From NCBI GenBank assembly GCA_002104905.1, contig MCFE01000407.1, forward strand, positions 1 to 64,000: DNA of 64,000 nt, read 5' to 3'. The stretch is from Basidiobolus meristosporus CBS 931.73. Its lineage: Eukaryota; Fungi; Basidiobolomycota. The notes beneath the pieces were generated by a model. That model did not search any database. It saw only the letters and a list, made by a program, of their open reading frames with translations, and was not told the DNA's origin. This document shows positions 11,419 through 56,689 of the stretch, one piece after another (position 1 is the first letter of the stretch; each line of letters starts with the position of its first letter). The translations under genes and the position numbers were made by a program.

Positions 11419-12495
11419 ATGGGTATCCTAGACATCGTTCCACCTGGCGTAGTGACCGGGGACAACCTTCGCAAGCTTCTAACCTACGCTAGCGAGCACC
11501 AGTTCGCCATCCCCGCCGTGAACTGCACCTCCTCAAGCACCGTGAATGCCGTCCTGGAGGCCGCGAGAGACATCAAGGCCCCGATCGTGATCCAATTCTC
11601 CAACGGCGGCTCCGCGTACTACGCGGGCAAAGGGATCAGCAACGACGGGCAAAGGGCTTCCATCCTGGGCGCCATCGCGGGCGCCCACCACGTCCGTACC
11701 GTGGCCAAGGAGTACGGGATCCCGGTGATTCTCCATTCCGACCATTGTGCGAAGAAGCTGCTGCCGTGGTTCGACGGGATGCTGAAGGCCGATGAAGCAT
11801 ACTTCAAGCAGCATGGGGAGCCGCTCTTCTCGTCCCACATGCTGGACCTTTCGGAGGAGCCGAAGGAGGAGAACATCCAGATCTGCATGGACTACCTGAA
11901 GAGGATGGCCCCCATGGGATGTCTGCTGGAGATGGAGATCGGCATCACCGGTGGCGAGGAGGATGGCGTGGACAACACCGGTGTGGACAACGCCTCCCTC
12001 TTCACCCAGCCAGATGACATCTGGGACGTCTACCGTAACTTCAGCTCCATCACCGACCTGTTCACCATTGCCGCTGCCTTCGGAAACGTCCACGGGGTCT
12101 ACAAGCCCGGAAACGTGGTCCTGCAGCCGCAGCTCCTGGGCAAGCACCAAGCATACGTCCAGCAGCAACTCGGCACGAAGAACACCAAGCCGGTCTGGTT
12201 CGTGTTCCACGGCGGTTCGGGATCGACCAAGGAGGAGATCCAGACCGCGGTCTCCTACGGCACCGTCAAGATGAACGTCGACACCGACACCCAATGGGCC
12301 TACTGGGAGGGACTCAAGAACTTCTACGAGTCCAAGAAAGCCTACCTCCAGCACCAGATCGGCAATCCTGAGGGCGAGGACAAGCCCAACAAGAAGTACT
12401 ACGACCCGCGAGTGTTTATCCGCGAGGCCGAGAAGACGATGATCAAGAGAGTCCAGGAGGCCTGCCAGGCGTTGAACAATGTAAACACTTTGTAA
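11419..12495 (+). CDS. FBA1: Fructose-1,6-bisphosphate aldolase class II (fungal type), 358 aa, intronless
   Basis: MGILDIVPPGVVTGDN start as in fungal Fba1. Motifs HSDHCAKKLLPWFDG, SSHMLDLSEE, EMEIGITGGEEDGVDN, FGNVHGVYKPGN, VFHGGSGS, KMNVDTDTQ, NPEGEDKPNKKYYDPR. Strong C/G-ending codon bias. Confidence 0.98.
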   Translation: MGILDIVPPGVVTGDNLRKLLTYASEHQFAIPAVNCTSSSTVNAVLEAARDIKAPIVIQFSNGGSAYYAGKGISNDGQRASILGAIAGAHHVRTVAKEYGIPVILHSDHCAKKLLPWFDGMLKADEAYFKQHGEPLFSSHMLDLSEEPKEENIQICMDYLKRMAPMGCLLEMEIGITGGEEDGVDNTGVDNASLFTQPDDIWDVYRNFSSITDLFTIAAAFGNVHGVYKPGNVVLQPQLLGKHQAYVQQQLGTKNTKPVWFVFHGGSGSTKEEIQTAVSYGTVKMNVDTDTQWAYWEGLKNFYESKKAYLQHQIGNPEGEDKPNKKYYDPRVFIREAEKTMIKRVQEACQALNNVNTL

Positions 12496-12608: not shown

Positions 12609-15600
12609 TTATCTTGGGTCCTCCCCGACCTCCACCTCGTCGCTGAGCCTTTGGGTTTGGATGGTTTTTCTCACTTCTTCGACCTCGACGTCCGATTCAA
12701 CCTCCTCCCCCGTTGGTTCCAGGTGGCTGGACGTCGGGCGCCCCTTACGCTGGCCCGCCTCGAACACTCGGCTTCCCTTGGGGGTGCGCTTTCCATTGAC
12801 GAACCGAGATTTCACCTTCTTCGACCATTTCTTCTCGTCGTGGGAGCTCACCACCGTAGGCCCCCCGAAGATCCCGCTCAAGGCGGCGCTCTTGGATTGC
12901 TTGGAGCCTTGCAGGCCGAGGATCTGGTAGATGTGGTAATTCGGCCCGGAGAAGTAGCTTTTCGACGGGTGCAGGGATTGCGGGGAGATCCCGATGCTTG
13001 CGCCGATGACGTTTCGGGAGGGCAGGGTGGCGGCCTTCGCCTTGAGCACCTGCTGTAGCCGTGAAGTCAGCCCCATCGGTTTCGTGGCTGTGGCGAAGCT
13101 TGGCAGCGGCTTGGAGAAGTAGGTGGAGAGTTTGTCGTCGAGGAACGGGCCCAACTTGTGCTGCAACGAGCATGTGGAGGCCAGAGCCCGGGCGCGCGGC
13201 AATGGGATCCTAAAGCAACTGGTGAGACCGGTGGAATTCGCCGGGATGAGCTTAGATGGCTTACCATGTACCAAAGAGTTGGCTATCCACTTTCCTGACG
13301 CGGACCCTACCTACCTCCAGGCTGAGCACTATGGTCCGCTCGCTCTCCGTCTCCACTCCCCCGAGCATGAGCAGTTTGGTGCCGTTCACGTAGCCAGAGT
13401 CGAAGCGACGCATCAGCTGGATGGTGTCGTCGCTGTTCGGCCCGTTCGACAGGTAGGTGACGTAGACAGGCGTGGATTCGATCTCAGTCAAATAGATGGC
13501 CGGTGTGGTGGGGGTGCGCGTGGGGATGAGGCTCTCCTCAACCGAACCTTCGCTTCTGCTGGGCGAATGGACGGCCGAGGTAGAGGGAGCCAAGTCGGCC
13601 GTCTCTGGCGGGCTGTTTAGTGAGCCGGGCTCCTCGTCGTCTTGGTCGAGGCTGATGTAAGTATCCGCGTCGAGACCCTCGACATTATCCTCTGCACCAC
13701 AAGGGCCGGTATTCTCAGACTGCGCGCTGGCTTTGGCAGAATACGGGTCTCATCCTCCAGATTGCTCTCCTGAGCAAAGTCGTATTCGGGAGTGGGGTTT
13801 GTTGTCAGTATGCCGCTCAATTCTACGAGGTGTTTGTCCATCTCGACGGGGTCGTACATCGTTTCTGGTAATCGGGCTGTCGTTAGTCCTACTCGACTTG
13901 GTCTCTAGCTTGCTGATGCCTTACCTCGGTTTTCACTCAGCGGGTCACGACTCAAGAGTTGCTGGATGTGGGGCACGTCTTGTATACCGTACTCAGCTGC
14001 CAGTTGACGAGCGCGCTCCAGAGACACCCTGTCGAGTTGGAAATGCTTCGTATGAGCGGGTGCGCTGCAGGATACAGATTGGGAGGGGAGAACTTACCAG
14101 ACCCCACGGCATTCCGGTGGGCCGTTGCGTATCACCACGAACCGAGTGTAGGCGTCGTTTCGCTCGGGCTTCCCGTGGCTTTCGTAGGTGCGAGCGGCTT
14201 TGCGCAGCAGACTGGCGTTGCAGAAATCCTTGTGACGGCTTTCCTCCAAGATGACCACGGATCGCCCGTGGCATTTGGGATCATTCGGTGGGGTGGCGAC
14301 GTTGGAGTGGAACCGCATCAGTCTGTAGGGCGGCTCGGGCAGTACGACTTCGTACACCTGGATGTTCGAATAGATCTTGTTGGTCACTTTTGGGATGAAC
14401 TCATCGATGGTGAGCGACATCGGATACGCTCCTTCCAAAGGATCATCAGAGGCGCCCCCTGTGGTCATCGCTGTATGGCTGCTGGCATTCGAGGAGGATG
14501 TGACCTCTGGAACAGCGGCACAGGGTTCGTGTGTATCATTCAGTGGCTCGGCATCGACATCCATCAAAGAAACATCACCTTGTGAGGGGAGCCGGGGATC
14601 GTCGCAATGCTTCGAAATATCCATGGAGCCTTGAGGGTTTTCGGGCCTCGTGATGTCGTGAGATAGGTGCGTTCGCATAGGGGAATGATCTTCGAATAGT
14701 CGTCTAGGGGTGAGGTCATGTCTGCGTGGAGACCCATTGAAAATCTCGTCCAACTCCGACATCGGGAGCGTTTCGGGGTTGTTCAGGTCCATCAGCGGGG
14801 CGTATGCAGAATCGGCGGCGAATTCGTCGCCGAAGTTTGGAATGAGATGAGAGTCGAACTCCCGACCAAAAAGTGACGCCGTGTCAGGTGTCAACAGGAC
14901 GGCATTCTCCTGACTGAGCTCTGTTTCGGCGGCTTTGCGAGCGGGGGTACGCGGGGCAGTGTTAGAGGGTCCTGGGTTGGCTCGGTTGCCCGCCGTGTTG
15001 GACGATGCTCGTTGAGCTGATGGTGGTGGGCTGGCTTTGTTCTGCTTCGTTGCCAGTGGGTCGGCCTCATAGCTGTCCATGTACCAATCGCCGTTCATCA
15101 TCTCCTCGAAGTAATCGCTATATTCTCCATCCAGCGGCGGCTCCTTGATGGCCTCGCGGGACTCCAGGGAGGCGGTGGCCAACGGTTGGGAAAAGGATGG
15201 GTCGCACGAGAGAGCACCCCCAGTGGTCGTAGATGCGTGAAGGTCGGAAGGGCTCTCGTTGCCGGAGTCCGAGTCCACCTCATCGATATCAGCATCGCTT
15301 CCACTCCCCGAGTTGTTGTCGGCGCAGACTCTGGTGGAGCTGCGATAGTGAGCGTGTGGAGCCCACTTTCCTTTTCCCCTCCCCGTCCCCACTCCCGGTC
15401 TAGCCCCAGACAGCATCGTTTTGTATCTCTTGAACACGTGATTCCCCAGCATACTATTCTTACGTTTTTTCAAGAGTATCTTTAGTTTTGGGTAACCCCC
15501 TTCTAGATGAGTGAACTCTTTAAGTGGCTTTAATGGTTGCGGTGGTTGTGGTTGTGGTTGTGAAGGTATGGATGTGAAACGGTCCAGTCCAGCCCTCACT

Positions 15601-16105
15601 GCTTCGTTGGCTAGATAGTAATGGATTTTTCGGGAATGGTGCTCGTCCACTATCCTCGCCAACAGTGGGGCTCTCGGGGGTTTGTGTTCGAGGGCCCTTT
15701 TGAAGTGTTGGGAGATCCGAGAGGAGACGGTAGCGTACGGGGTGGCTCCGCTAGAAGATAAGAAAGAGGTGAGTATATGGGACGAGGGGGTCGGCTATTC
15801 GGTGGCAAGGTGATCAAGGGGGGGGGAGATAGAGAGAGTTTCGTGTGCGACGATACTTACCCAAGAAGTGTGAATCTATGCTTTATGATACAGTTTGCCA
15901 GTTCTTTTGGGGAGCTTGGCTTGTTGTCCAATACCACCAGAGCCTTCAGTATGGCGGTGAAAACCTTGTCTTTGGCGTCATCTGGGTGTAGGATTTCCGA
16001 GGGAAGGGAGAGTGTGGGATGGTTCGGTAAGCTGTTGGAGTTCGGGCCCCCGTCTGAATGGTCTCCCGAGTGCTGAGCATAATCTATCTCTGGATGGAGG
16101 GACAT
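12609..16105 (-). CDS. 1053-aa putative transcription/chromatin factor: N-terminal Gds1-type winged helix plus two APSES/KilA-N domains
   Basis: Exons 16105-15861, 15750-14098, 14028-13925, 13876-13745, 13691-13265 and 13209-12609 are all GT-AG and phase-consistent (3162 nt). Winged helix: KVFTAILKALVVLDNKPSSPKELANCIIKHRFTLLGGATPYATVSSRISQHFKR. APSES-1: YRLMRF..FCNASLLRKAA..GVWVSLERARQLAAEYGI. APSES-2: LMRRFDSGYVNGTKLL..GTWIPLPRARALA. Confidence 0.85.
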
Positions 16106-16643
16106 TATGTGAGGTGGGAAGTATTCACCCGTAAGGCTCGTGGTTGTGTACGAAGGCCACTTGGATGGAAGCAGGATTAGGCAGGTGACTAGGTCTAGAG
16201 GAATATGAAGCAAGCCAGTTGCAAGGTATACAAGGAGAGCAGCTGAAATATATCAGGGACGAGTCTGAGAGGAGCGGAGGGCGGTGGGGGACTGGTCGAC
16301 GTAGAGCCTTGTAACAGCACCCACGGCTGGAAAGGAAACAAAAATAAGGTCGATTGATAGATAGACCCGGTTATACCGGATATCCATCAATTATGGTGAT
16401 TGTGCGGATGGTTCCCAAGTGGGAATTCCCCTACCAACGCACCGCCTATTGTTGCTTTCCGACTATTTTTTTCGGGAATTCTTCTGGAGCATGAATCCCA
16501 ATCTTATTGGGTTTCAAACTTTACCATCGTTTATGGCGCGGTATGATTGGCCGCTGATTCCCATTTAATAATGTACATAGATCTTTATTTACAATGACCG
16601 TGTCTGGCGACAAGTTGGGATGGATGGCCACGAACGAACGGCA

Positions 16644-18704
16644 CTATTTGACCAGCAGCACACACAGTGCCAGCATGAACGACACGAACGACAACGACGG
16701 GGAATCCACCACCACCGCGGATCCGGCGGCGGCAACGGCGTTGATGGCTCTTGCTGGAATGGATGTCAGTATCGGGAGAGGCGCGCGTGGGGTGGTTGGG
16801 GACCGGGGCTACTTACGGGAGCAGTCGAGATGGCACTGAAATGCCAGCGTGCCGCGATCACTAATCCTATCGTTGGACGGACAGCCGTTGAGGGGATTAG
16901 GTTGCACCTTGCAGAAGGTCAGGTTCTTCGGGGCGGGGACGTCGGGGAAAATGCTGTTGAGCGCGTTGAGATGAATGGCTCTGGAGGGGGATGTTTAAGT
17001 GACCGCGCAGTCAGGGACAGCAATGAGAGACACGAACAAACGCTGAAGTCGCTCCAGGTCACCCAGAGAGCCTGGGACCGGCCCCGCAAGCTGGTTCTGA
17101 GAAAGGTCACTGGCCGATATGGGTTAGTGGGAATCCGCGGTGGGTCAGGGCGATCACTTACAGTCGCTCGAGGTTTTTCAGCTCGCCGATGGTACTGGGA
17201 ATGGATCCGATGAGCTTGTTGTGCGACATGTCACTAGGATCGAGATGTTTAGAACACACGGGGGATGAGCGGATCCAATTGGTGTGGCACATACAGGGTC
17301 ATCAAATTGGTTAGACCGGTATACGGGCCGGGGATGTTCCCTTGGATCTTGTTATGGCTTATGGAACTAGAGTAGATCAGGTTAGCGATGGCGCTGGCGA
17401 TGGCGATGTGATTGGTAACGCCACTGACATGACTCGAAGCTCGACGCATCGTGCTAAGCCTTCGGGCAAGGGTCCTTCCAGCATGTTATGCCTCAAATAT
17501 CTTTCGCCGAGGCGCATTAGTGTTGTATCGGTATTTGAGACAATGCGGAACTTACAATGAACGCAGCTTGGCCAGGTTTCCAATGGCGTCGGGGAGATTC
17601 CCTCGGAGTTGATTGTAATCTAGGGAGCTAACCGGTTGGGTAAGAAGGTCATTTCGGGAGAAGATCGCAAGCGACGAGCCTCGTACAGAATCTCCAGACT
17701 ACTCAGCTTGAAGATCACCGGTGGGAGAGCATCGGCAAACTGGTTGCTGCTCAGGAATCTGTCATGTACGTTGGTTAGCCGGTGGCTGGTGCGCATGGGA
17801 AATCCTGTAGAACCCACAATCCCCTGAGATTCATTAAGCGATCCATGGATTCCGGAAGACTGGTGAACGAGTTGTTCTTCAGATGCCTACGAAGCCTGGG
17901 TGAGTTTGAGGTCATCGGGGATGGGCACAGATACTCACAGGCTTTGCAGGCTGCTCATCCCGCCCACGAAATCTCCGATTGCCCCGCCGAGGTTATTCTC
18001 GTCCAGATTCCTGTGGTGCGGGTGGTTAGTACACCGGATGGGCCAACGGATCGCCAGACAGCCCTTACAGGGAGAGGAGTGTCGACAGCGCGCCAAAGGA
18101 GTTCGGAAGCGGCCCAGACAGCTGATTCTTGCTGAGATCTCTGAAGGAGAAACGCGTTTAGATCCTCTTCCAACCACGAAGACTACACACTGCAGACGAA
18201 CAAAATAAGTAAGCTTGATAGTTGCCCGATTTCAGCGGGGATTGCTCCCGAGACACCATTTGCCGAGAGTCGAATCGCCTTGACTCTCCCACTGTTGTTG
18301 CATGCGATGCCATGCCAGCTGCAGCAGCTCAGGGGATCCTGTGAGTCCCAGCCATCTTTGTTGAGCCACATGAGGCCATTCATGGTGGAATAGATCGTTC
18401 TCAGGACCCTGCAGTCTGCTAGTAGGCTTGTCTGCTGGGCCTCGTTTAGCGTGACACCAGGGGGGAGGCCCGCGACGACAATTCCCCCTGGGCTGCGGGC
18501 TTCCTGTTCTGAGGGAGTCTCGACGACATCGATGTCTTCAGGAGGCTCCGGAAGCTCATCAGAGGCTCCGGGGAGGGGCTGACCATCAGAGGGTCGTGGG
18601 CCCGGTTCGTCCGAAGTGCCTTTCCCCCCTGGTTCTTGGGAAGAAGCCAAGTTGTTTAAGAGTAGCCAAGAGCTGAGGATCAGCCAAATCAATCGAAGTT
18701 CCAT
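16644..18704 (-). CDS. Secreted plant-type leucine-rich-repeat protein (473 aa, 12 exons) with probable GPI-anchor signal
   Basis: Signal peptide MELRLIWLILSSWLLLNNLASS, acidic/Pro linker, LRRNT cap (W..QDPLSCCSWHGIAC), about ten LxLxxNxLxGxIPxxxGxL repeats, a Cys-rich cap, and hydrophobic tail SLSFVSFMLALCVLLVK*. Exons: 18704-18202, 18140-18069, 18010-17939, 17886-17818, 17758-17687, 17627-17556, 17500-17429, 17366-17295, 17233-17162, 17109-17038, 16980-16817, 16753-16644. Confidence 0.9.
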
Positions 18705-18746: not shown

Positions 18747-18754
18747 TTTTTATA
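18747..18754 (-). promoter_or_regulatory. Probable TATA box of the LRR gene
   Basis: TATAAAAA on the minus strand about 45 nt upstream of ATG 18704. Confidence 0.45.
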
Positions 18755-20066
18755 GAAGCCATTGGCCATATGTAGTAACCTGGGCGTGGAGAACCCAAGG
18801 TTGTCTCCAGCTTGCCTAATCCATCTTTGCAGTGGTTGGGGGACCCATGTAAGTGACTGCGCATACCGAAGAGCAACGTGCCACCTGGAAAAGGTTGCAT
18901 TGAAGAGCCAGACGGCGTGGGCTAGCACCAACATCATTCGTGCACTGCAACACACATGTGAAGAGGACGATCGCGCGCTTCCGTGCTCGTCCCGCATGCG
19001 GTCCCGGCGAAGAGGATTCACCAGCAGCTGACCAATGCCAAGGTGAAACTGGAGAAGATCCCTCAATGCAGCCGCATGGATCGGAGAAACCATCAGTGAA
19101 AGGAACCTCCCATAGACAAATAATGGTTCCCAGATCGGCCAAGTAGCCGCGCGAGTGTTGTCGATATCTAGAACATCCACATCCGCATTCACAACCGCAT
19201 CCACATCCACGGTGATTCACAATTACGTGGACGCGTGAGGAGTTCGCCAATGAACCAAGATAACTGCGCAACACTGTCGGCCAATGCCAACGGCCGCTCT
19301 GCGCGAGGCCTAGATTTCGGAATTCCAAGGCGGAGCAGAGATAGGCGGCAGCTGGATGAAACCCTAATCATCGGAAGATCAGCGAGCAGGACGTGCGCTG
19401 AAGCTGCTCACAAATCGAGCAGCGTGTTCCACTCACCCGGCGAGTTATGGAAATCGGTTTCGCACCATTTTAGGCTCCAACCATCTCGGAATCCGGGGCC
19501 ACCGATAGGTTCCTGAAAACACCACGGCTCGGCCTGCTGTTCCAGCAACGGATCGAGCTCAATCTCAAAAGGAACCAGCCATCCACTATCCACTATCCAC
19601 CGTCGACCGTCGACCGTCCACCCGCCACCAACCTCGAGTCAGCACTCCTGGCGCCGCTCCAACGGCCATGGCGAACGTTCCCGATTTCATCACGAGAATG
19701 TGGCGAATTTAATACTGCATAGCTCGTTTGTACCAACCATACGTTGATACAAAGCATCATCGGGCTGCCAATCAGCTGGGGCTGCATAGCATGGATCGGT
19801 CAAACTGGATTGCTCTTCCAGAACGGCAACAACAAAGCTTCATGCGATTTGCATTTAGATCTCGCTCAGCCTCACTACGCTCGGCGGCGATTCAGTTCCT
19901 TTGCCCGGTCATATTGGATCCGTATAAATTAAAATACCCGGGTTTCACAAAAATAAACTAGCTGCGCCTTGATAGTCTGCTTGGCGTAGAGATCCAAGGC
20001 ACTGCTTGGTTGGACCGATACATCACCCAGCCCTCTTCACCTCCCCCGCTTCCTCTCCCGTGGCCA

Positions 20067-20167: not shown

Positions 20168-21292
20168 ATGATTACTGAACCATTGCCCACCCCCACCCCC
20201 ATCCACACGCTAATGGATCAGTTTGCCAACGGTAAGAATGGTGCAATGAACGAGGGGGCCGAGTTCAATCCAGTTTTCTCCGCCGATTATCTAAGCAACA
20301 GCGACAACGATGCCGACCCTCTTCACTACGACAACTCGAACATCTCCGACACCCACAACAGCGTGAGCGAGGACGAGTTCCTCATGAACTACAACTTCGG
20401 CTCCAACGTCGTCACCCAGCCCAACTTCACCCACGACATGATCGCCCAGAGCTCGCTCGCTCCATCAGCCGATTTCGACTCGCGATTGAGCTCCAGCAAG
20501 TTCGACTGGAGCTCCTTCAGCAACCCCGGCCCCAACGGGCCCATCCCCGGCGTACCCATGAGCAACATGCCCATCCTCGTGAGCAACCCCTTCGACCCGA
20601 CGTCCCAGCGTCGCTCCAGCCTTCCCGGGGACTCCGACGGGGCGGACTTCGCCGCGATCGGGGACCTGAACCACCGGAAGCGCGTCTTCTCCTGGGCCGA
20701 CATGAACCATACCAGCTATTTCGGCCCCGACATGGACTTTGCCCAATCAGTGCGCCGCTCTTCCGTCAACATCCCACTTCAAGACGTGCGCAACCATGCC
20801 TCCTACATGAACCCATACGCTGCCAAGGTCCCCACCCACCTGAACCTCGCCCAGCCCCATCCCCATCCCGCCCCCAACTCCAGCGAGCCAAATCGCCATG
20901 GCTTCCCGCTGGACGAGGCGCTGTCGAACTCTCCCTCCTTCCCCACAGAAGATGTCAAGCACAAGACGAAAAGCAAGAAGTCAAGGAGCGCGGCCATGGC
21001 CGCCCCGGAGAAGAAGCACCTACCGAACGGGGTGGACAGCCTTGGGCCCGAGGCCCCACAGCAGTCGGTGGTGGAGCGCCGCCTGAACCGGAGGCGGGAG
21101 AGGAACCGACTGGCCGCGCGACGCAGCAGGGAGAAACGCACCCAGTTCTTGAGGGACCTCGAGGGGTTGAACGACTCCCTTCGTAACGAGAACAACGCAC
21201 TCAAAGGGAAGCTTTGTGAGGTGCTGCGGGAGCTGGAGATGTTGCGTGGGTCGGCCACACAGGAGGGGAGCTCCGCTTCCAATCATTCCTGA
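20168..21292 (+). CDS. bZIP transcription factor (C-terminal basic region and leucine zipper), intronless from first in-frame ATG, 374 aa
   Basis: RRRERNRLAARRSREKR followed by heptad leucines L..LEGLNDSLRNENNALKGKL; acidic/Asn/Ser-rich N-terminal region. The frame is also open upstream back to 19976, so the true start is uncertain. Confidence 0.9.
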   Translation: MITEPLPTPTPIHTLMDQFANGKNGAMNEGAEFNPVFSADYLSNSDNDADPLHYDNSNISDTHNSVSEDEFLMNYNFGSNVVTQPNFTHDMIAQSSLAPSADFDSRLSSSKFDWSSFSNPGPNGPIPGVPMSNMPILVSNPFDPTSQRRSSLPGDSDGADFAAIGDLNHRKRVFSWADMNHTSYFGPDMDFAQSVRRSSVNIPLQDVRNHASYMNPYAAKVPTHLNLAQPHPHPAPNSSEPNRHGFPLDEALSNSPSFPTEDVKHKTKSKKSRSAAMAAPEKKHLPNGVDSLGPEAPQQSVVERRLNRRRERNRLAARRSREKRTQFLRDLEGLNDSLRNENNALKGKLCEVLRELEMLRGSATQEGSSASNHS

Positions 21293-41919: not shown

Positions 41920-44900
41920 TGTTGAATTATTGGATTATTTGGTATCATGCAGCAGCTAAAAGTTTGCTTAACAATTCTAGACCAGTTTTGGTCACTGTAG
42001 GACTTATTTGCAGCCCCAACTTGGACAGTTTCTTCACATATATGATCCTATGATTACTCCCCTATAGTGAAGATGAAATTGACACTTCTTACCCAACATT
42101 TTGTACTAGCCCTGAAACTGCTACAGAATGCTCCTAAATGTTAAAAAACCTCCTTACTTAGTATTACAGCTGTATTACCTCTTCAAAGGTATAAACACTG
42201 ATCCTCTTTATGAATGAACAACAGTTTCACTATTATCACTATATCTTGATAAGTTCTTATATCCAGATCACTACTTAAATTGCAACAGGTTATGAGCCCC
42301 AATTGTCTTAATCTATCCCAAAGATTACCTCAACTGGCAAACAGAACAATACAAACATTTTCCCTGTAAGGAGAGGCTTGATGGGAAGAACTACAGACTT
42401 TGGAGAATCAAGATGCAGATCCACCTTGAGAAAAGAGAGCTTTGGAATACAGTAACAGGAAAAGAAGTTGACCACAAAGGAACAACAGAAGAAGTGCAGA
42501 AGTTTCAAGAGATGTAGAGAAAAGCCTTTGATGCTATATGTTTCATTGTGCAAGATTCCTTCATTGGACAAATCCATGCTTCAAATACTGCCAAAGCAGC
42601 ATGGGAATCCTTAGAGAAGATACTTAGAGCAAAAGCAGTATCAAGCAAGCTTTATCTAAAACAAACATTTTTCAACATGGGGAAGAGCCAGATTATGACA
42701 TGCTACAAATTGTTACCACAATGGAGACACTTGCAGAAGTACTTTACAGTATTAATGCTGCTGTAGATGATGAAGAAAAGATACACTGTATGCTTTGCAG
42801 CCTACCAGATAAGTATGAGCCACTCATACTTTCCTTAGAATGCAGAGAAGACAATTTGACTTTTGACCTTGCTCAAGGAAGATGTCTCCACAAAGAACTT
42901 AGACTTAATGATCAAGCAGAGAAAATTGTAGACAGTTCTTTATTCAGCTCAGAGAGGCACACAGAAAAGAAGGGAAAGCAACAAAACCAAAGAGAACCTG
43001 GTTGCTGTAACTATTGTAAGAAGCCAGAATACTGGGCAAGAGAATGGAAGAAGAAACAAGCAGAAAAAAACAGCAACTGGAGCAGGCAAACCATATAGCT
43101 ACTGATGGACAGCTATTTGTAACTGTACAAGAGAGTGCAAGTAACCAAAGTAATGAATGGTATATTGACTCTGGAGCATCACAGCATATTTGTAGTATAA
43201 AGGAGTGAGTCAGCAACTCAAAGACTATTCCTGTAAGAAAGGCTTATCTGCAAGACAACTCTGCACTGGATGCTACCATCAGTGGGTCTTTACTACTAAA
43301 TGTGAGTGATATCTCATGGGCTACAACAGAAAAATTGACTGACATACTCCATGTACCTGCAATAGCTAAGAACCTACTCTCAGTCAGTAAAGCAACTGCC
43401 CAGGGACTGATATTTGTTTTAATATGCTCAGCTGCTCAATAATGAGTAAAAATTGACAAAAATTAGCCTTAGAAATCAGCAATCACAATACAGACATGTT
43501 ACAATGCAAGATCACTGTTACTGAGTATGCCAACATTGCTGAAACTGATGAAATTAACTGGGTGATGTGGCATAGGAGGCTAGCTTACATAGGGGAACAG
43601 AAAATGGACCAATTGGTGAGAAGTAAGCTTATTTTTGGCCTCAACTACTCAATTCCAATCAAATTGAGTGTATATAGGGGATGTTCATATTGCAAGCAGA
43701 CTAGGCAACACTACAGGAGCTCAGTAGGCATCAGCACCACCAAATTATTGGCTATTGTACACTCAGTTCCATGTGGGCCCATGAGAATACTATCCTTTGG
43801 AGCCAAGAGATACTTTATGATGTTTACTCATGACAAGACAAGACATACAAAGGTGTAATTCCTTAAAACAAAGGATGAGGATTTAGAGATGCTGAAACAC
43901 TTCAAGAACATGGTAGAAACACAAACTTGGTGTAAATTGAAGGTACTTTGAAGTGATAATGTGGGGGCATACTGCTCAAAGGAGTTTGCATAATACTACA
44001 CATCTACTTATATTACTCAGCCAACCACTGTTTCACATACTGCACTGCAAGATAGAATAGCAGGACATATAAATAGAACAGCAGTAGAGATGGGAAGTTC
44101 TATGGTGCATGATATGGGAATGGACTTCAGGTTTTTGGCTGAATGTGTTGCTATTGCAGTATACATCAAGAATAGATGCCAACAACAGCACTACAGGGTT
44201 CTACACTCTTTGAGGCATATACAGGCAAAAAACCAGACCTCCAGCACCTCAGGTTCTTTGACACTGATGTCTTTTATCACATCCCTGACAAAAAACGCTC
44301 AAGCTGGAACCAAAGAGTAGAAAAGGGATCTTTCTTGGGTATTGTGATGATGCTAAAGGGTATAGAGTGTATGATGGCAAGATTCAGATGCTGATCAAGA
44401 GCAGGGATGTTGTATTTGGGAAGAATTCAGATCAGAAAGCCACAGATATCTTTGGGCAGCTGCCTGATGATGCAAGCAGCACTAATGAAGAAAATACATA
44501 CCAAATTCAGCCAGATACAGAAGGTATTTCAACCAGTTCCAAATTGGAGCAGATTATCCCAGTTAGGAGGTGTACCAGAATAAGAAATGCCCATGGATCC
44601 TGGTGGTAGACATCCATTGATGATGAAGAAGCTTATCTTCCCTTATGTGCCAAACCTCAGAATCTGGAACAGGCAATGCAAAGTCCAGATGCTACTATGA
44701 GGCAACAAGCCATTCAGGAGGAGTACCAATCACTGATGAAAGTCAAACCATGGGATCTGGTAGATTTACCAAATGGGAGACAGCCAATAGGATGTAGATG
44801 GGTCTGCAAGATCAAGATAACCTCAAATGGTACAGTTGATAAGTACAAGGATAGATTGGTGGCTAAAGGCTATTCCCAGATCCAGGGAATAGAGTTTAAG

Positions 44901-46594
44901 GAAACATTTGCTTTGGTTGCCAGGTTTAACTCCATTAGGACAGTCCTAGCCCTAGCTGCTGTACACAGTATAGATCTACACCAAATGGACGTCAAAGCAG
45001 ACTCTCTGAATGAGGATTTGCAAGAAGCCATAAGTATGGAGCAACCAGAAGGCTTTACCAATCTAAAAGACCCCCATAACTTGTGCAGACTCAGGAAATT
45101 GTTTTATGGGCTTAAGCAGGCACCTAGAGCATGGTATAACAAAATTGACACATATCTAGAGGGGATTGAGGTTATTTGTAGCACTTCAGATCAGAGTATA
45201 TACATGAAACAGCTCCAAAAGGGTGTGAGCATGCTAGTTCTGTATGTGGACAACCTAATAATAGCTACAAGTGACCAGGGGGCACTTAAACAGACAAAAT
45301 CATATCTCTTCAGTAAGTTGGAGATGAAAGATCATGGGAAATAGAGCTAATTTCTTGAAATTGAAGTGAATTTGATACACTTAGGCAGAAAGATGTGCTG
45401 AATCAGTCTAAGTACATCAGGAATATTATTAGACACTTCAAAAGGAAAATTTGCAAGTATGCAGCTACCCTTATGGACAATAATCTAAAATTGAGCAAAT
45501 CTCAGCCAGTTTTAGGTGAAAATTGCTCAAATATGGACCAAAACCATCCTTATCAACCCATGGTTGTTAGTCTGATGTACTTGATGGTGTCTAGATGTCC
45601 TGATATTGTTGTGGCAGTTGGAATAGTCAGTCAATTAATGCAGAATTATGGATCAGATTAGATTACAGCAGTTTAGCGGATTTTCACATATCTACAAGGT
45701 ACCATAAATATGGTACTGGAATACTCTGGAGCAGCTAATTAGCAGAAATATGATGGTTATAGTATTTCAGATTGGGGCAGCAATCTGATTGACAGACACT
45801 TTACCACTGGGTATGTATCTCTCTATGCTGGTGCAGCTATTACTTAAAATTGCAAGATACAACCAACTGTGGCCCTATCTACAACTGAAGCTGAATATAT
45901 GGCTGCTTGCCAAGCAACTAAGGAGGCTGTATGAATATGGAAATTATCCAAAGACTTAGTCTTTACTCATACATACCAACATGTACTTACAAAGGTAATC
46001 AAAGCTGTATTGCATTAGCAAGGCATTGTACTAATTATGCCAAACTAAGTACATAGATATAAAACACAACTTTGAAAGGGAAGCTGTAGAAAATAGCTTA
46101 GTAGAGTTGGTTTACAGTCCAACTGACAAAATGGTAGTAGATGTATTGACCAAACCACTAGTTAGACCACAATTTGAGAATCTCAGAGAGGAATTAGGAT
46201 TAAGAAATTATTTAGTTGAGGGGGAGTGTTGAAATATTGGACTAATTGGTATCATTCAGCAGCTAAAAATTTACTTAACAATTCTAGACTAGTTTTGGTC
46301 ACTGTAGGACTTATTTGCAGCCCCTACCTTGCCAGCTTCATCACATCTTTGACCCTTTGATTATTCCTCTATAGTGAGGATCAAATCAACACTTTTTACC
46401 AAACATTATGTACTAACCCTGAGACTGTTACAGAATGCTCCAAAATGCTAAGAAACCCCCTTACTTAGTGTTGCCACTGTATTACTCCTACAAAGGTATA
46501 AAGTTGATCCTCTTTATGAATAAACTACAGTTCATTTATTACCACTATATCTTGATAAGTTTCTTGTATCCAAATCACTTCTTACATTGCAACA
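41920..46594 (+). mobile_element. Full-length but inactivated Ty1/Copia element A (family 1)
   Basis: 368-bp LTRs 41920-42287 and 46227-46594 (TG...CA, roughly 80-85% identical), PBS GGTTATGAGCCC 42288-42299, PPT GAGGGGGAG. gag-PR-IN-RT-RH order with many stops. Flanks ATAGC/GTAAC are at best a decayed TSD. Confidence 0.92.
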
Positions 46595-50560: not shown

Positions 50561-52324
50561 CTTTATCTCTATGAAAAGTTACTATTATGATCCTGTCAAA
50601 AGGCTGTCACAGATTCTAACTCCTGTGACTAAGAGGTAATGATTCCATCAGGACACTGTGCAAAAATTGTCAAAAAAAATTGCATTCCATACAACATAAA
50701 TTTGGCCATAATACATCATCATGACAATACAAAGGTGTCTTTCATATGGTTGTCTGCTAATTTTCTCACTTTCTGATCACAGACACTCTACCACCTTCTA
50801 CATTTGTGTGCATTGATTGACTATTGCCTCTTTTTCACACTCCTTACTTCTTAACTCAACATTTTCTCTTATTTTTGCTCAAACAAATTGATTTACTTCT
50901 GTTAAAACTTCAGTTGTGCCACAATTGCCAATCCTATTGACCTATACATGTCCCTATACCCTACACTAATATCAAGCATAACCCTACACTCAACATGTAG
51001 CTTCATTAAAATCCACCACTTAGGTAGTATTTCTGTGGTAACACTCTGTTTGCAAGACTTTGGTAGGAACCCAACAGCTTTATGCCACTGCTCCTTCACT
51101 GGTTCTGTTGCAATTTAAGAAGTGATTAGGGTACAACAGACTTATCAAGAAATAGTGGTAAGAGCTGAACTGTTGTTAATTCATGAAGATGATCAGTATT
51201 TATACCTTTGTGGAAGTACTACAGCTGTAACACTAAGTGTGGAGGGTTTCTCAACATTCAGGAGCACTCTGTAAATGTTTCAGGGTTAGTACATGATGAT
51301 TGGTAAAAAGTGTTAATCTAATCTTAACTATGGGAAATAATCATAGGATCATAGATCTGAAGAAACTGGCTAAATTAGGGCTGTAAAATGTTTCCAAAAC
51401 AATTACTTACCAGAAATATTTCTTGCAAAAAGAATACCAAAAATATTTAAGTGGCAAGTTGTTACATATGTCTGCTTGCAAATATTATCCAAACATATCA
51501 ATACTAATACAACATATCCCGCCTTTGTTTTTGTCAATGAAGTCCAACGCTCAAGGCTGATGATTTAAGTTTTATCTTAGGGCATCAAGGTAACAAGTTA
51601 TATGTTGGGGAAAGCTTGGATACTAAAGAGAAAGGTCATGTACAATTACTAAAAAGACTTATAGCTGCTGAATGATACCAAATAGTCCAATATGTCAACA
51701 CTCTTCCTCAACTAAGTAATTTCTAGATCCTAGCTCCTCTCTGAGATACTCAAATTGTGGTCTAACTAGTGATTTTGCCAATATATCTGCCACCATTTTG
51801 TCAGTTGGACAGTAAACTAACTCTACTAAGTTATTCTCTAAAGCTTCCCTTGCACAGTGGCGTTTTATATCTATGTGCTTAGTTCTGGCATTATTGGTAG
51901 GATTCCTAGCTAATGAATTTCAATCTTGATTATCTTTGTGAATATGTGTTGGTGCATCTTTGCTGAAACCCAAGACTTTGAATATTTCCATAGCCATATG
52001 GCCGCTTTAGTGGCTTGGCATGCAGCCATATATTCAGCTTCAGTTATGGAGAGGGCCACAGTTGCATGTTACTTGCAACTCCAAATAATAGCCGCACCGG
52101 CATAAAGAAATACATACTCAGTGATAGAGTGTTATGATCTGCCGCTTGAATGTTTAAGTTAGATCAGTTTTTAGTCAAATCAATTAGTATATGTTTAGGT
52201 TATCAGTATATCAGTATTATCTATGAAATCAGTAGCATTAGTCAGCAAATGAATCAGCAGATCCTTATCAGACAGAAAAAGATATATTAAGTAGGATCTT
52301 ATTGGGTGATGATGATGCAATCAA

Positions 52325-52333
52325 ATGAGTCAT
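52325..52333 (+). promoter_or_regulatory. AP-1/Gcn4-type site ATGAGTCAT in the Ty3 LTR, upstream of TATA (GTATATAAG ~52388)
   Basis: Perfect palindrome. Also at 56895-56903, and as ATGACTCAT at 35754-35762 in the diverged copy. Confidence 0.5.
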
Positions 52334-52555
52334 CAGCCACAACCTACATTAGGAAATACAATTAGTCAGCAATTGATCTGGCAAAATGTATATAAGGAGC
52401 TGCTGGAACCTCAATAAAAATCAGTTCAAGTTTTAGTGAATACAATACTAGCTAAACTCCCTATTCCTCTACAACTCTTATACCAAGACTTGTAACATTG
52501 GTAGCAGCGATAACCAGAAACCTCCCTCCTGAAGAAAGAAGAAAACACCCTCAAG

Positions 52556-55500
52556 ATGTCGGACAATCAAGAATGGAAGAATGCCATGCAGCAAATCCTG
52601 GCCCAACAGCAACAGCTACTCCAGATCCTCAGCCAACAGCAACAAGGAATGACTACCATGGCTCAGAGCCAGCAAAGCCCTATCAAGAGCAACTTTAGTG
52701 TGAAGGTCAACCGGTACCATGGCAGAGTCAATGAAAACCTGGGAACTTGGCTCTTTCAGATTGAAGAAGCTTTTAAAGCTAAAGGAATTGCTCCAGAGAG
52801 CAAGTTGCATTATGCAGCTTCTTACCTGGCAGATGCAGCTTTACAGTGGTACCACAACAAGATCAGGTCAGCTACTATGATGGGATGCTCTACAATCTCT
52901 ACCTGGGATGAGTTTGTGTCGGAAATTCAGGATGCTTTTGAACCTCCACACCAGCAGACACTACTAAGAAGGAAGTTAAAGACACTCAGACAGAAAGGAA
53001 TGGTGCAAGAATACATCTATGAGTACAGATGTCTACTTGGACAAATTGAAAGAATGGACCCCTTGGATCAAGTTGAATACTTTATTGATGGGTTGAAAGA
53101 AAGAACTCGCAAGGAAGTCAATTACCGAAGACCTCAGACTATTGAAGAAGCCATCAAGATTGCCATTGACTATGACTCAGCTATGTTTGGAGTTGGGAAG
53201 CCTACAGTGACTAGTCAGAAAGGCTATAATCATTATGAAAGAAGACAATCAGAAGCAGTACCAATGGAAATAGACGCTATGCAGAAGAATCCCTCCTCAG
53301 AAGAATGCAAGAAGAGAGGACTTTGCTTTAATTGCCACCAGCAGGGACATATTGCAAAATACTGCCCTCAGAGAAGAAATGGACACCAGCCAACAAGAAC
53401 CTTCAACCATATTGAATCCCATGAACACAATAATGAGGAAGATGAGCTTGAAGAAGACTCGGAACTCACCTTCCATATGACAGAAGAGTACTTGTCCCAA
53501 ATGACTTCAAACTCAGGGAAGTTATTGTACCTGAATGGAGCAATCAATGGAGTACCTGCCAAGATCATGATTGACTCAGGAGCATCGCATGAGTACATGT
53601 CAGAGCAATTTGCTTTGAAAGCTGGAATCAACTCGGAACCTACCAAATCAACTTCAGTCTCCACAGCAGATGGGAACTCCCACATAATCAACCGTATTAC
53701 CCAGCCAGTAAGAATGAAGATCAATGACTATGAAGAAGACCTACAGGCTTATATATTTGGGAACTGCAAGTTTGACCTTGTACTTGGGAAAACCTGGCTA
53801 TTTTGTCGTAATCCATCAATCAACTGGAGAACCCATGCTACTCAGATCCAAAAAGACAACAAGACCTATGAGCTATTACCTGCCAGGCTGGATTTCAACT
53901 TGGTCAATTCCAGTGTGTGTGAGACAAGTGAACTTAGCAAGACCCAGTTCTGTAGAGCACTTAGAAAAGGTACCCAGATGTTCCTCATGGCGGTATTACA
54001 GGAGGATTCCTCTATCCCAGCACCCCAGCAGGTCCAGACTCTCTTGAAGAAATATTCAGACGTGTTTCCAGATGAGCTTGTAAGCCTACCACCAGTCAGA
54101 GACGTGGATCATGCCATTGACACAGGAGATAGCCCTCCAGTGAGCAAGACACCTTACAGAATGAGTCCATTGGAATTGGAGGAAATGAAGAAACAAATTG
54201 ATCAGCTATTGGAGCAAGGATACATCAGGCCCAGCAAGTCACCTTGGGGAGCACCAGTGCTTTTTGTGAAAAAGAAGGATGGAACACTTAGGATGTGCAT
54301 TGACTACAGAGCCCTGAACTCAGTTACCGTCAAGAATAAGTACCCCATACCTCGGATTGATGAGCTTTTGGACCAACTTAATGGAGCCACTATTTTCAGC
54401 AAGATCGACCTCATGTCAGGATACAACCAGATTAGGGTGAAACCAGAAGATATCCCTAAGACAGCATTCAGGACCAGATATGGACATTACGAGTACTTAG
54501 TCATGAGTTTTGGCCTCACTAATGCCCCTGCAACATTCATGACGCTGATGCAGACTGTCTTTCAGGAGTACTTAGACAAGTTTGTGATAATCTACCTGGA
54601 TGACATATTGATATACAGCAAGACAGAAAAGGATCACATGGTGCACATTGAAAAGGTCTTGAAGAAACTAAGAGAGAACAAGCTATACGGCAAGCTAGCC
54701 AAGTGTGAATTCTTCAAGGAACACGTAGAATATCTGGGACACATAGTGACTAGCACAGGAGTAACCTTAGACCCCAAGAAGGTGGAAGTAATCAAGAATT
54801 TGAAGCAGCCCCATAGCATATCAGAACTCAGATCCTTCCTTGGAATGGTTTCCTATTATCGGAGATTTGTCAAGTCATTTGCAAGTATTGCAGCCCCTTT
54901 AACTGATATCCTCAAGAAAGAGAATACCTACAAGTGGGACATAGCTTGTGAGACTGCCTTCCAGACGCTAAAGAATGAACTTGCTAAGTTACCAAGCTTA
55001 AGAATACCAGACTTCAGAAAAGAGTTCACTCTATGCACAGATGCTTCAGATTATGCAATTGGTGGAGTGCTGAGCCAAGAACACGAGGGAAAGGACTACC
55101 CTGTTGCCTTTGAATCCAAGAAACTGAACTCAGCAGAACAAAACTATCCAGTCCATGAGAAGGAGATGCTTGCTATAATACACTGTTTGAAGACATGGAG
55201 ATGCTATATTGAAGGAGTCAAATGCACTGTGAAGACTGATCATGCCTCCCTCAAGTATATATTTACTCAGAAGGTACTCTCTAGAAGAATGACAAGATGG
55301 AGTGAATACATTCAGCAATTTGACCTGGAGATTGTCTACTGCCCTGGAAAAAACAACACGGTTGCTGATGCCTTATCAAGATTAGATCAAGTTGCACAAC
55401 TCAACTTGGTGCATGAATCAGATTGGCCTAGCCTATTACCAAAGTACTTGGAGGACCAAGCCATTCCTAATGAGGTGGATGAAGATATCAAGAAGATAAT

Positions 55501-56689
55501 CCGGGATGAAGCCAGCAAATTTGTTGTACAGGATGAAACACTCTACCGAATTGTTGATGGAAGCCCTATTGCCTATTGTCCTTATGTTGCTCGCCTGGAT
55601 TTAATACATAAGCTACACAATGGATATGGACATCTTGGGATTGAAGGAACCTATAGCCTTGTAAAAGCCAGAGCATGGTGGCCCAGAATGAAACAAGACA
55701 TTGAGAAGCTAGTAAAAACATGCCCAAACTGCCAAATCAATCAAGGCCAGCCACAAAGAATTGCCGAACTCTTCCCTTTGGAGCCTGTAAGACCATTTGA
55801 GAGATGGGGAATTGACTTTATTGGAAGACTGCCAACTACCAGGAAATGTAACCGTTGGATCCTAGTAGCTATTGACCATGCCACTAAATGGCCAGTTGCT
55901 AAAGCCGTACCAATAGCCAGTGAACAAGAAGTTGCAAGTTTCATTTACCATGAGATCCTGATGAAGTTTGGATGCCCTGTGGAGATCTTATCCGATAGAG
56001 GTGCAAACTTTATGGCAAAGACATTAGAGGCTTACCTGGAAATGCAGCAGATCAGACACTTGAAAACCTCGGCATATCACCCCAGAACTAATGGAGTCAC
56101 TGAGCGGTTTAATGGATTATTTGGAAAAATGCTGACTAAGTATGCAAATGGAGTTGTCAGTAGATGGGATGAGTATATAGACCAAGCACTCTTTGCATGC
56201 AGAGTCAGAGTACACAACACCACCCAGCAATCACCATTTTACTTAGTTTATGGATGTGAACCTAGGATTCCAGGAGATCTCACACAACCCAAGCTTACAG
56301 ATGCCTTAGAAGATGAACTTAGTCAGCCAAGTAGACACCAGCAACTGGAACAAAGACGTCAAGAGGCACAGACCAAAGTATCTCAAAGTGCAGAAAAGAT
56401 GAAGCAGAGATTTGATAAGACTATAGCACCAGAAGCATTGACAGTTGGGAACTTTGTATTGCTAAGAAACAACACTCGGAAGAAGTTTGAGCCACAATGG
56501 ACAGGACCATTCAAGATCATCAGAGAATGTCCATTTGCAACTTACCAACTGGTGGACAAGCAAGGTAATATCCGGGAAGACTTAGTGCATAGGGACAGAC
56601 TCAAGCTTGCAAGACTTGCTGATAATACTGAACCATCAAGATATTGGTATCACAAGAAAAGAGATTCAGGAGAACTCTCTCAACTTTAG
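52556..56689 (+). CDS. Single-frame Gag-Pol polyprotein, 1377 aa (capsid, CCHC knuckle, aspartic protease, RT, RNase H, integrase)
   Basis: [91 protein letters not shown]. No chromodomain at the C-terminus. Confidence 0.97.

What the first reader, a model, noticed from the sequence alone, without database searches (positions are those of the whole stretch)
16644..18704. Cell-surface plant-type LRR protein built one repeat per exon
Seen: nine consecutive internal exons are exactly 72 nt (one is 69 nt). Each encodes one LRR and each is bounded by phase-2 introns splitting the same conserved Leu/Ile codon, so any exon can be skipped, duplicated or swapped without frameshift. The protein has a signal peptide, LRRNT cap and GPI-like tail but no kinase or cytoplasmic domain. 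Known: this exon-per-repeat layout occurs in plant LRR receptor kinases and brown-algal LRR genes linked to exon shuffling, while extracellular LRR receptors are rare in Dikarya. Inference: a candidate diversifiable recognition or defence receptor, or a PGIP-like enzyme inhibitor, in a fungus. This is the strongest candidate for an undescribed system here.
Basis: partly seen in the sequence, partly recalled or inferred. Interest (0 to 1): 0.78.

Follow-up and report, generated by a model that had tools for sequence, protein, structure and literature searches.

The report
Basidiobolus surface LRR protein, one repeat per exon
This is a real, intact gene of the early-diverging fungus Basidiobolus for a secreted, probably lipid-anchored leucine-rich-repeat protein with one repeat per 72-base exon; the layout is a known eukaryotic design, the family is unstudied, and nothing here shows active reshuffling.

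Summary
A minus-strand, 12-exon gene (18704..16644) encodes 473 aa. Exons 2-10 are 72 nt (exon 4 is 69 nt), each encodes one 24-aa LRR, and introns 1-10 all split the same hydrophobic codon in phase 2.

The product has a signal peptide, a roughly 70-aa acidic Pro-rich disordered stretch and a four-Cys N-cap. The N-cap model superposes on plant receptor and Bacteroides LRR caps. Ten or eleven plant-specific-type LRRs follow, then a four-Cys C-cap and a GPI-signal-like tail with no cytoplasmic part.

- The host is Basidiobolus (the neighbouring aldolase is 91% identical to B. ranarum), not a Dikaryon.
- Secreted plant-RLK-like LRR proteins of zygomycetes were already tabulated in 2010.
- 72-nt same-phase LRR exons are known from brown algae.
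- The nine exons are only 43-61% identical, their introns are unrelated, and there is no second copy in the window. The array is therefore old and frozen, not visibly shuffling.

The scan has already flagged this stretch once and at least six sister LRR genes elsewhere in this genome. The joined protein was not searched, so orthologues were not examined. I file it as a new member of a known kind, of moderate interest.

The parts
18749..18765 (-). Core promoter motifs: CCAAT (18765-18761) and TATAAA (18754-18749), about 50 nt upstream of the ATG
   Evidence: Motif positions; sequence read
18639..18704 (-). Start codon and signal-peptide-like N-terminus (aa 1-22, MELRLIWLILSSWLLLNNLASS, with an A-x-S site before QEP)
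   Evidence: Hydropathy maximum 2.24 and sequence; modelled as a helix at aa 3-19. No SignalP run was possible
18420..18638 (-). Acidic, Pro/Glu/Gly/Ser-rich low-complexity stretch (about aa 23-95), predicted disordered
   Evidence: Sequence; pLDDT 50-67 across aa 21-80; not matched by any homologue
18273..18419 (-). LRR N-terminal cap (about aa 96-144): a helix followed by a beta hairpin, Cys98, Cys127, Cys128, Cys135, W..C.WHGI.C motif
   Evidence: Pfam LRRNT_2 only 15.2 bits (cut-off 20.7). phmmer against the PDB hits plant LRR-kinase N-caps (GSO1 1.5e-17). 40-48% identity to bacterial cap modules. Model pLDDT above 90; Foldseek matches 4ECO, PXY, SERK1 and PGIP caps at rmsd 2.1-2.9 A
18202..18272 (-). 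LRR 1 (RLSANGVSGAIPAEIGQLSSLLIL), the last part of exon 1; no intron separates it from the cap
17038..18140 (-). Array of nine one-LRR exons (exons 2-10: eight of 72 nt and one of 69 nt), bounded and separated by ten phase-2 GT..AG introns of 52-62 nt (introns 1-10). Consensus in exon register: xLSxNxLxGxxPxxxGxLxxLxxL
   Evidence: Single exons give weak Pfam LRR_1/LRR_4 hits (E 0.01-0.07)
16817..16980 (-). Exon 11: a degenerate last LRR plus a C-terminal cap with Cys406, 416, 432 and 436 and an N-glycosylation sequon (NLT)
   Evidence: No Pfam or PDB sequence match
16644..16753 (-). Exon 12: small-residue run AAAGSA (candidate omega site G448), a 9-aa spacer, a 13-15-aa hydrophobic tail ending ...LLVK, then stop TAG. 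This is a GPI-attachment-signal-like C-terminus
   Evidence: Hydropathy and sequence. This is the only hydrophobic segment besides the signal peptide. No GPI predictor was available
16584..16589 (-). AATAAA polyadenylation-signal-like motif 55 nt after the stop

Best explanation
This is a native, intact Basidiobolus gene for a 473-aa protein of the secretory pathway. After signal-peptide removal the product has a disordered acidic Pro-rich N-terminal stretch, then a disulfide-capped curved solenoid of 10-11 plant-specific-type 24-residue LRRs. The C-terminal signal is most likely exchanged for a GPI anchor. That would place the LRR domain directly on the outer face of the plasma membrane, or in the wall after transfer, as happens to many fungal GPI proteins. 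The protein has no cytoplasmic part. It can therefore only bind something on its concave beta-sheet face (a protein, peptide or glycan), and it either hands that ligand to a membrane-spanning partner or acts as an adhesion or wall-organising module. The one-LRR-per-72-nt, phase-2 exon array is best read as the frozen footprint of the exon-plus-intron duplications that built the array long ago. It is a design shared with sister genes and with LRR genes of other eukaryotes. It permits in-frame exon skipping or swapping but does not demonstrate it. Shown here: the gene model, the domain order, the LRR class, the cap fold, the host genus and the lack of recent duplication. Inferred: signal-peptide cleavage, GPI anchoring, surface location and the binding role.
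For: Gene model and exon phases. Promoter, poly(A) and branch-site motifs. LRR consensus with N at 10/10, P at 9/10 and G at 8/10 positions, the hallmark of the 24-aa plant-specific class. Exon 1 matches only plant LRR receptor-kinase ectodomains in the PDB (66 chains, best 1.5e-17). The cap model has pLDDT above 90 and superposes on Bacteroides LRR (4ECO), PXY, SERK1, FLS2 and PGIP caps. The only hydrophobic segments are the first 20 or so and the last 15 or so residues, with AAAGSA plus a spacer before the tail. Host: the neighbouring class II aldolase is 91% identical to B. ranarum and 84% identical to a B. meristosporus CBS 931.73 paralogue, and both neighbouring proteins are held by NCBI, UniRef and EukProt on an 80,410-bp contig. 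Old array: exons are 43-61% identical (mean 51%), introns score 0.53 against 0.47 when shuffled, and there is no paralogue in the window. Same design elsewhere: 72-bp exons in one shared phase (called phase 2 by the authors) in brown-algal ROCOs, and all-phase-2 introns in similar-sized gonadotropin-receptor LRR exons as cited there (PMC11378527); phase-2 excess in Brassica LRR-RLKs (PMC4654520).
Against: No transcript evidence was available, so the splicing is inferred from GT..AG sites, frame and LRR register. The signal peptide and GPI signal were judged by hydropathy and small-residue rules only. The hydrophobic tail is short (13-15 aa), and there is no Ser/Thr-rich stalk of the kind typical of fungal wall GPI proteins. 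Pfam LRRNT_2 is below threshold, and the C-cap matches nothing. GC3 is 65% against 82-84% in the two neighbouring genes, which may mean low expression. No ligand, partner or expression data exist.
Confidence: 0.6

Rival explanations
1. A soluble secreted binding protein or enzyme inhibitor of the PGIP type. The LRR solenoid is released into the medium or wall and blocks a foreign hydrolase or binds a microbial protein. The hydrophobic C-terminus is either not used as a GPI signal or is removed in an isoform.
For: The size and build are those of PGIP: about 10 repeats of 24 aa and four Cys in each cap (the PGIP disulfide pattern is recalled from memory). PGIP structures 1OGQ and 8IKW are among the cap fold matches. 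Retaining intron 11 would stop translation two codons later (..DCSRK*) and delete the GPI-like tail.
Against: The tail has the standard layout of a GPI signal. PGIP ranks no better than many receptor ectodomains. No polygalacturonase link is known for an animal-gut or soil saprobe. No isoform data exist.
Confidence: 0.15
2. A diversifiable recognition receptor. Exon skipping, duplication or exchange among the symmetric 72-nt exons of this gene and its paralogues generates many binding specificities, as proposed for brown-algal ROCO genes and Tetrahymena LRR genes.
For: All nine exons are symmetric (phase 2-2), and every possible junction stays hydrophobic. Several sister genes with the same layout are noted in this genome (unchecked). 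The gene sits about 5 kb from a 40-kb retrotransposon-rich block. Alternative splicing of such exons is reported in Ectocarpus (PMC11378527).
Against: The exons are only 43-61% identical and the introns are unrelated. In the shuffling systems, exons and introns are near-copies. There is no tandem paralogue or spare exon in 64 kb. Each repeat is distinct and the array is complete with both caps, as in stable plant co-receptors.
Confidence: 0.1
3. A wall-organising, glycan-binding GPI protein analogous to Ecm33/Sps2. The LRR-like solenoid binds chitin, chitosan or glucan and helps build or mask the wall rather than sensing anything foreign.
For: A fungal GPI-anchored protein with an LRR-like fold that binds wall polysaccharides has been described (PxECM33, PMC13282541). 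Fungal GPI proteins are often wall-linked (general knowledge).
Against: No sequence relation to Ecm33 was seen. Exon 1 matches only plant-kinase-type LRRs, and no Pfam receptor-L domain was found in the pieces scanned. The repeats are of the canonical protein/peptide-binding 24-aa class.
Confidence: 0.1
4. A gene family acquired from bacteria by horizontal transfer and later invaded by introns.
For: The cap plus first LRR (aa 96-165) is 40-48% identical (60-68 bits) to modules of large bacterial LRR proteins with lipoprotein-type N-termini, and 32-45% identical to loci in Porphyromonadaceae, Pseudomonadota, Acidobacteriota, Gemmatimonadota, Calditrichia and Dehalococcoidia. The top Foldseek hit is a Bacteroides LRR protein. 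Basidiobolus is reported to carry bacterial genes (recalled from memory, not checked).
Against: There are eleven spliceosomal introns, ten at the same repeat position, which fits unit duplication in a eukaryote. Plant ectodomains match as well. Similar secreted LRR proteins occur in Mucorales and a chytrid. The library ranking favours long multi-repeat proteins, so 'bacterial first' is a size effect.
Confidence: 0.05

Closest known systems
Plant LRR ectodomains with an LRRNT_2 cap (SERK/BAK1 co-receptors, ERECTA-family, GSO1, FLS2; PGIP)
   Same: 24-residue LxxLxLxxNxLxGxIPxxLGxLxx repeats. N-cap with W..C.W.G..C and the same fold. Secretory signal. About 10 repeats, as in PGIP. A phase-2 excess in the introns of Brassica LRR-RLK genes (PMC4654520).
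   Different: No transmembrane helix or kinase. A GPI-like tail instead. Pfam LRRNT_2 is below cut-off. The C-cap is unrelated by sequence. There is a 70-aa acidic disordered N-terminal extension. The host is a fungus.
Brown-algal ROCO and LRR-only genes with shuffling 72-bp LRR exons (Zambounis 2012, PMC3341825; Teng 2024, PMC11378527)
   Same: One LRR per exon, exon length exactly 72 nt, and all introns in one phase, so exons are interchangeable.
   Different: The algal proteins are cytoplasmic LRR-ROC-COR GTPases. Their exons are near-copies with documented alternative splicing and positive selection. Here the exons are 43-61% identical, the introns are unrelated, and no isoforms are known. 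Whether the intron sits at the homologous repeat position was not tested, because the algal paper's numbering suggests a different codon split.
Secreted plant-RLK-like LRR proteins of zygomycetes listed by Soanes & Talbot 2010 (Muci92600, Phybl70934, Phybl78885, RO3G_08725, RO3G_11619)
   Same: Early-diverging fungi. Signal peptide plus LRR_1 repeats (one entry with LRRNT_2), no other domain, and best Swiss-Prot hits to plant LRR kinases.
   Different: These are known only as table entries with no function. Homology to the present gene was not tested here, because the joined protein could not be searched and those sequences were not retrievable.
Animal GPI-anchored LRR proteins (CD14, Nogo receptor, Drosophila chaoptin and connectin); recalled from general knowledge
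   Same: A capped LRR ectodomain tethered by GPI with no cytoplasmic part. These act as ligand-presenting co-receptors or adhesion molecules.
   Different: A different LRR class and different caps, with no sequence relation shown. This is an analogy of architecture only.
Bacterial multi-module cap+LRR proteins (e.g. Bacteroides BACEGG_03329 / BT_0210, PDB 4ECO / 4ECN)
   Same: The cap helix motif (ALxALYxxTxGxxWxxxxxW....W.GV) followed by NxLxGxIP repeats. 32-48% identity over about 70 aa. Top fold matches.
   Different: The bacterial proteins are 700-4,800 aa, often carry several cap+LRR modules and other domains, mostly lack the cap cysteines, and have no introns.

Membership tests
Plant-specific-type (24-aa) extracellular LRR domain | Tandem 24-residue repeats with LxxLxLxxNxLxGxIPxxLGxLxx | tested here: met
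   Ten in-register units: N 10/10, P 9/10, G 8/10, and L/I at the scaffold positions. phmmer aligns LRR1 to many repeats of GSO1, ERL1 and At4g26540
Plant-specific-type (24-aa) extracellular LRR domain | N-terminal cap of the LRRNT_2 type | tested here: inconclusive
   The Pfam score of 15.2 is below the 20.7 cut-off. However, sequence matches to plant caps and the fold match (pLDDT above 90; rmsd 2.1-2.9 A to SERK1, PXY and PGIP caps; Foldseek E 1e-3 to 5e-2) support a cap of that fold
LRR receptor kinase / receptor-like protein | Transmembrane helix followed by a cytoplasmic tail or kinase | tested here: not met
   The ORF ends one residue after the terminal hydrophobic stretch. There is a stop at 16646-16644 and AATAAA 55 nt later
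PGIP (polygalacturonase-inhibiting protein) | Secreted protein with about 10 LRRs and disulfide caps | tested here: met
   10-11 LRRs and 4+4 cap cysteines. This covers architecture only
PGIP (polygalacturonase-inhibiting protein) | Orthology to plant PGIPs and inhibition of polygalacturonase | not testable with these tools
   The joined protein could not be searched. PGIP is not ranked above other plant ectodomains for exon 1. No assay was possible
Shuffling LRR-exon arrays (brown algae, Tetrahymena) | Equal-length exons, one repeat each, all introns in the same phase | tested here: met
   Eight exons of 72 nt plus one of 69 nt, with ten phase-2 introns
Shuffling LRR-exon arrays (brown algae, Tetrahymena) | Evidence of recent exon duplication or exchange (near-identical exons and introns, spare exons) | tested here: not met
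   Exon identity is 43-61%. Intron identity is 0.53 against 0.47 when shuffled. No further LRR exons in the window
Shuffling LRR-exon arrays (brown algae, Tetrahymena) | Alternative splicing that combines LRR exons | not testable with these tools
   No transcript data
GPI-anchored protein | N-terminal signal peptide | tested here: inconclusive
   The n/h/c layout and the A-x-S site fit. No SignalP was available
GPI-anchored protein | C-terminal omega site with small residues, a polar spacer, and a terminal hydrophobic stretch | tested here: inconclusive
   AAAG|SA, the 9-aa spacer VVVDSPSLS, then FVSFMLALCVLLV-K. This is a rule-of-thumb reading only, and the tail is rather short

The most novel reading that the evidence does not exclude
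Basidiobolus, a gut-associated early-diverging fungus, may run a cell-surface LRR recognition system of its own. In this reading, GPI-anchored LRR proteins such as this one act like CD14 or plant co-receptors. They capture a microbial or host ligand and pass it to the membrane-spanning LRR-SH3 paralogues noted elsewhere in the genome. The symmetric one-repeat exons would allow isoform or paralogue diversification. That would contradict the textbook statement that fungi lack extracellular LRR pattern receptors.
Probability: 0.1. Interest if true: 0.75.

Novelty: new member of a known kind. Interest (0 to 1): 0.4.

Why it matters
Fungi are usually said to lack extracellular LRR receptors (Soanes & Talbot 2010). 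Early-diverging lineages do, however, carry unstudied secreted and anchored LRR proteins of the plant class. This gene is a clean example, with complete caps, a GPI-like tail and a textbook modular exon design. It gives a concrete target for asking whether such fungi sense microbes or hosts at the surface. It also bears on whether the 72-nt same-phase LRR exon seen in plants, brown algae and animals is ancient or convergent. By itself the locus adds one more family member and no functional evidence.

Tried and rejected
1. phmmer of exon 1 against 1.84 billion representatives gave 16,965 hits. The 150 shown are all long multi-repeat, bacterial-looking proteins ranked by summed score, so the true orthologues stayed hidden.
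2. The word-index search with exon 1 was blank because of the length filter.
4. Cluster look-ups returned no names for the bacterial hits, and the window's own proteins are masked.
5. The ESM Atlas gave only generic bacterial, diatom and green-algal LRR clusters.
6. The JGI metagenome and GTDB genome scans gave only distant bacterial cap modules (28-45% identity) and no fungal contig.
7. Exon-by-exon Pfam scans gave only sub-threshold LRR_1/LRR_4 hits, as expected for single repeats.
8. The C-cap exon matched nothing in Pfam or the PDB.
9. The search of earlier findings by sequence was blank, which says nothing.
10. Literature searches for Basidiobolus plus LRR and for GPI-LRR in Mucorales found no study of the family.
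11. Rejected: a 78-nt version of exon 4 using an in-frame AG 9 nt upstream, because it would insert three residues inside the LxLxxN strand. Also rejected: a tandem-paralogue or spare-exon reservoir in the window.
12. Left out on the operators' rule: the joined 473-aa spliced product has no reference and was not handed to any search, family-scan or fold tool. It was used only inside scripts for frame checks, repeat statistics and a self-scan of the window.
Full report
**Observation.** The minus strand between 18704 and 16644 carries a stop-free 12-exon model found by a GT..AG search constrained by frame.

- Exon 1 is 503 nt, exons 2-10 are 72 nt (exon 4 is 69 nt), exon 11 is 164 nt and exon 12 is 110 nt including the stop.
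- The eleven introns are 52-63 nt long and all are GT..AG. Seven carry a CTAAC/CTGAC/CTAAT motif 11-29 nt from the acceptor (intron 10's at 29 nt), and each introduces a premature stop if retained.
- Introns 1-10 are phase 2 and intron 11 is phase 1.
- TATAAA and CCAAT lie about 50-60 nt upstream of the ATG, and AATAAA lies 55 nt after the stop.
- An in-frame alternative acceptor 9 nt upstream of exon 4 exists but would break the LxLxxN strand, so the 69-nt exon is preferred.

**The protein (473 aa).**

- Residues 1-22 look like a signal peptide.
- Residues 23-95 are acidic and Pro/Glu/Gly/Ser-rich. They are modelled as disordered (pLDDT 50-67).
- Residues 96-144 form the N-cap, with Cys98/127/128/135.
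- Ten clear 24-residue LRRs follow (one in exon 1, nine in exons 2-10), plus a degenerate eleventh.
- The C-cap carries Cys406/416/432/436.
- The C-terminus reads AAAGSA, a 9-residue spacer, then a 13-15-residue hydrophobic end.
- In exon register the consensus is xLSxNxLxGxxPxxxGxLxxLxxL, which is the 24-residue 'plant-specific' LRR class. The intron splits the codon of the Leu/Ile that opens LxLxxN.
- Only the first two bases of that codon come from the upstream exon (CT, TT or AT). Hence all 100 possible exon joins still give L, F, I or M. This explains why a phase-2 split at this position makes such exons interchangeable.

**What the pieces resemble.** The joined protein has no reference and was not given to any search, family or fold tool.

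- Exon 1 gives only a sub-threshold Pfam LRRNT_2 hit.
- phmmer against the PDB returns 66 chains, and all 60 listed are plant LRR receptor ectodomains (GSO1 1.5e-17, ERL1, FLS2, SERK/BAK1).
- An AlphaFold model of exon 1, built with nine bacterial cap modules as the alignment, has pLDDT above 90 for residues 85-160.
- That model superposes on the caps of Bacteroides LRR proteins 4ECO/4ECN and of PXY, SERK1, FLS2 and PGIP, at rmsd 2.1-2.9 A for the plant chains and one 4ECO chain (5-6.5 A for 4ECO_B and 4ECN), over about 75 columns. The E-values are weak because the piece is short.
- Single LRR exons give only weak LRR_1/LRR_4 hits.
- The C-cap matches nothing.
- The cap plus LRR1 module is widespread. 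It gave 16,965 hits in the 1.84-billion-protein library, and the top 150 are long bacterial-looking multi-repeat proteins at 40-48% identity per module.
- Related loci occur in six bacterial phyla and in a few metagenome contigs.
- The ranking by summed score favours long proteins, so it says nothing about origin.

- The neighbouring single-exon class II aldolase (11419-12495) and a bZIP gene (20168-21292) are exact entries of NCBI, UniRef and EukProt on an 80,410-bp contig.
- The aldolase is 91% identical to Basidiobolus ranarum and 84% identical to a paralogue in B. meristosporus CBS 931.73. The next hits are Mucoromycota and Neocallimastigomycota.
- The window is therefore Basidiobolus, as the scan's earlier notes said, and not a Dikaryon.

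**Is the array being reshuffled?**

- The nine LRR exons are 43-61% identical at the DNA level (mean 51%).
- The introns share nothing beyond splice signals (0.53 against 0.47 for shuffles).
- The window holds no other LRR exon.
- In the systems where exon shuffling is argued, exons are near-copies and alternative transcripts are documented. These are the brown-algal ROCO genes, with 72-bp exons called phase 2 by the authors (PMC11378527, PMC3341825), and Tetrahymena, with 90-bp phase-2 exons (PMC6564038).
- Here the design is the same but the copies are old.
- The simplest reading is an ancient build-up by duplication of an exon-plus-intron unit, since frozen.
- All-phase-2 introns are also reported for the similar-sized LRR exons of gonadotropin receptors (via PMC11378527), and a phase-2 excess is reported for Brassica LRR-RLKs (PMC4654520). 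The layout is therefore not new in kind.

**Prior knowledge of the family.**

- Soanes & Talbot 2010 argued that fungi lack LRR pattern receptors. Their Table S5 nevertheless lists secreted LRR proteins of Mucor, Phycomyces and Rhizopus whose best hits are plant LRR kinases, and Table S4 lists a chytrid protein that hits FLS2.
- I found no paper on LRR proteins of Basidiobolus or on GPI-anchored LRR proteins of zygomycetes.
- The scan itself has noted this same stretch once (s1-190913) and at least six other plant-type LRR genes in this genome. One of those is a GPI-type 12-exon gene that a follow-up agent called annotated and shared with Mucoromycota, and two have SH3 tails. Those notes are leads; I tested only the genus.

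**Mechanism.**

- Most likely (0.6) this is a GPI-tethered, or wall-transferred, LRR binding module with no signalling part of its own. It would act as a co-receptor or ligand-presenting protein, or as an adhesion or wall-organising protein.
- The rivals are:
  - a soluble PGIP-like binder or inhibitor (0.15), for which intron-11 retention would delete the anchor signal;
  - an actively diversifying receptor (0.1);
  - an Ecm33-like glycan-binding wall protein (0.1; PMC13282541);
  - a bacterial origin for the family (0.05).
- None can be settled without transcripts, localisation and the paralogue and orthologue set.

**Verdict.** This is a new member of a known kind. It matters mainly as one element of an unstudied LRR surface-protein family in an early-diverging fungus. 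Interest is 0.4.

Noticed in passing
window 23000-64000: The G+C content drops from about 53-59% to 34-43%. The block is a nest of retrotransposon sequences with many 71-94% identical direct and inverted copies, for example 1,074-nt arms at 43065-44138 and 58343-59416 (94%). The LRR gene lies about 5 kb from its edge.
   Followed up: partly
window 52126-56995: An apparently intact, very young Ty3/Gypsy element. It has 100% identical LTR segments (at least 300 nt) at 52126-52425 and 56696-56995. These flank one 1,377-aa gag-protease-RT-RNaseH-integrase ORF (52556-56689).
   Followed up: partly
window 44676-45344 and 62367-63101: A Copia-type reverse-transcriptase fragment (RVT_2, 1.5e-53) and a weak Transposase_21 (tnp2) fragment that scores below Pfam's cut-off.
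   Followed up: no
window 11419-12495 (+): A single-exon class II fructose-bisphosphate aldolase. A second copy at 84% identity exists in B. meristosporus, so the enzyme is duplicated in this genus.
   Followed up: partly
window 14094-15662 (-) and 20168-21292 (+): A 522-aa ORF rich in Ser/Pro/Asp with no Pfam match, in a region of strong G-over-C skew. Also a 374-aa bZIP protein that is an exact database entry.
   Followed up: no
window 16754-16816 (intron 11) and 17887-17895: Retaining intron 11 would end the protein two codons later and remove the GPI-like tail. An in-frame alternative acceptor lies 9 nt upstream of exon 4. Both are possible isoform sources, and neither has been tested.
   Followed up: no
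L001:690-2787 (metagenome contig Ga0209737_10101492): A Bacteroidota-like (39% G+C) gene. It joins a signal peptide and the same cap+LRR module to a C-terminal region carrying an HELLGH metalloprotease-like motif.
   Followed up: no
window 16644-18704: The GC3 of the LRR gene (65%) is well below that of the two neighbouring genes (82-84%). The introns have the same G+C content as the exons (55%).
   Followed up: no
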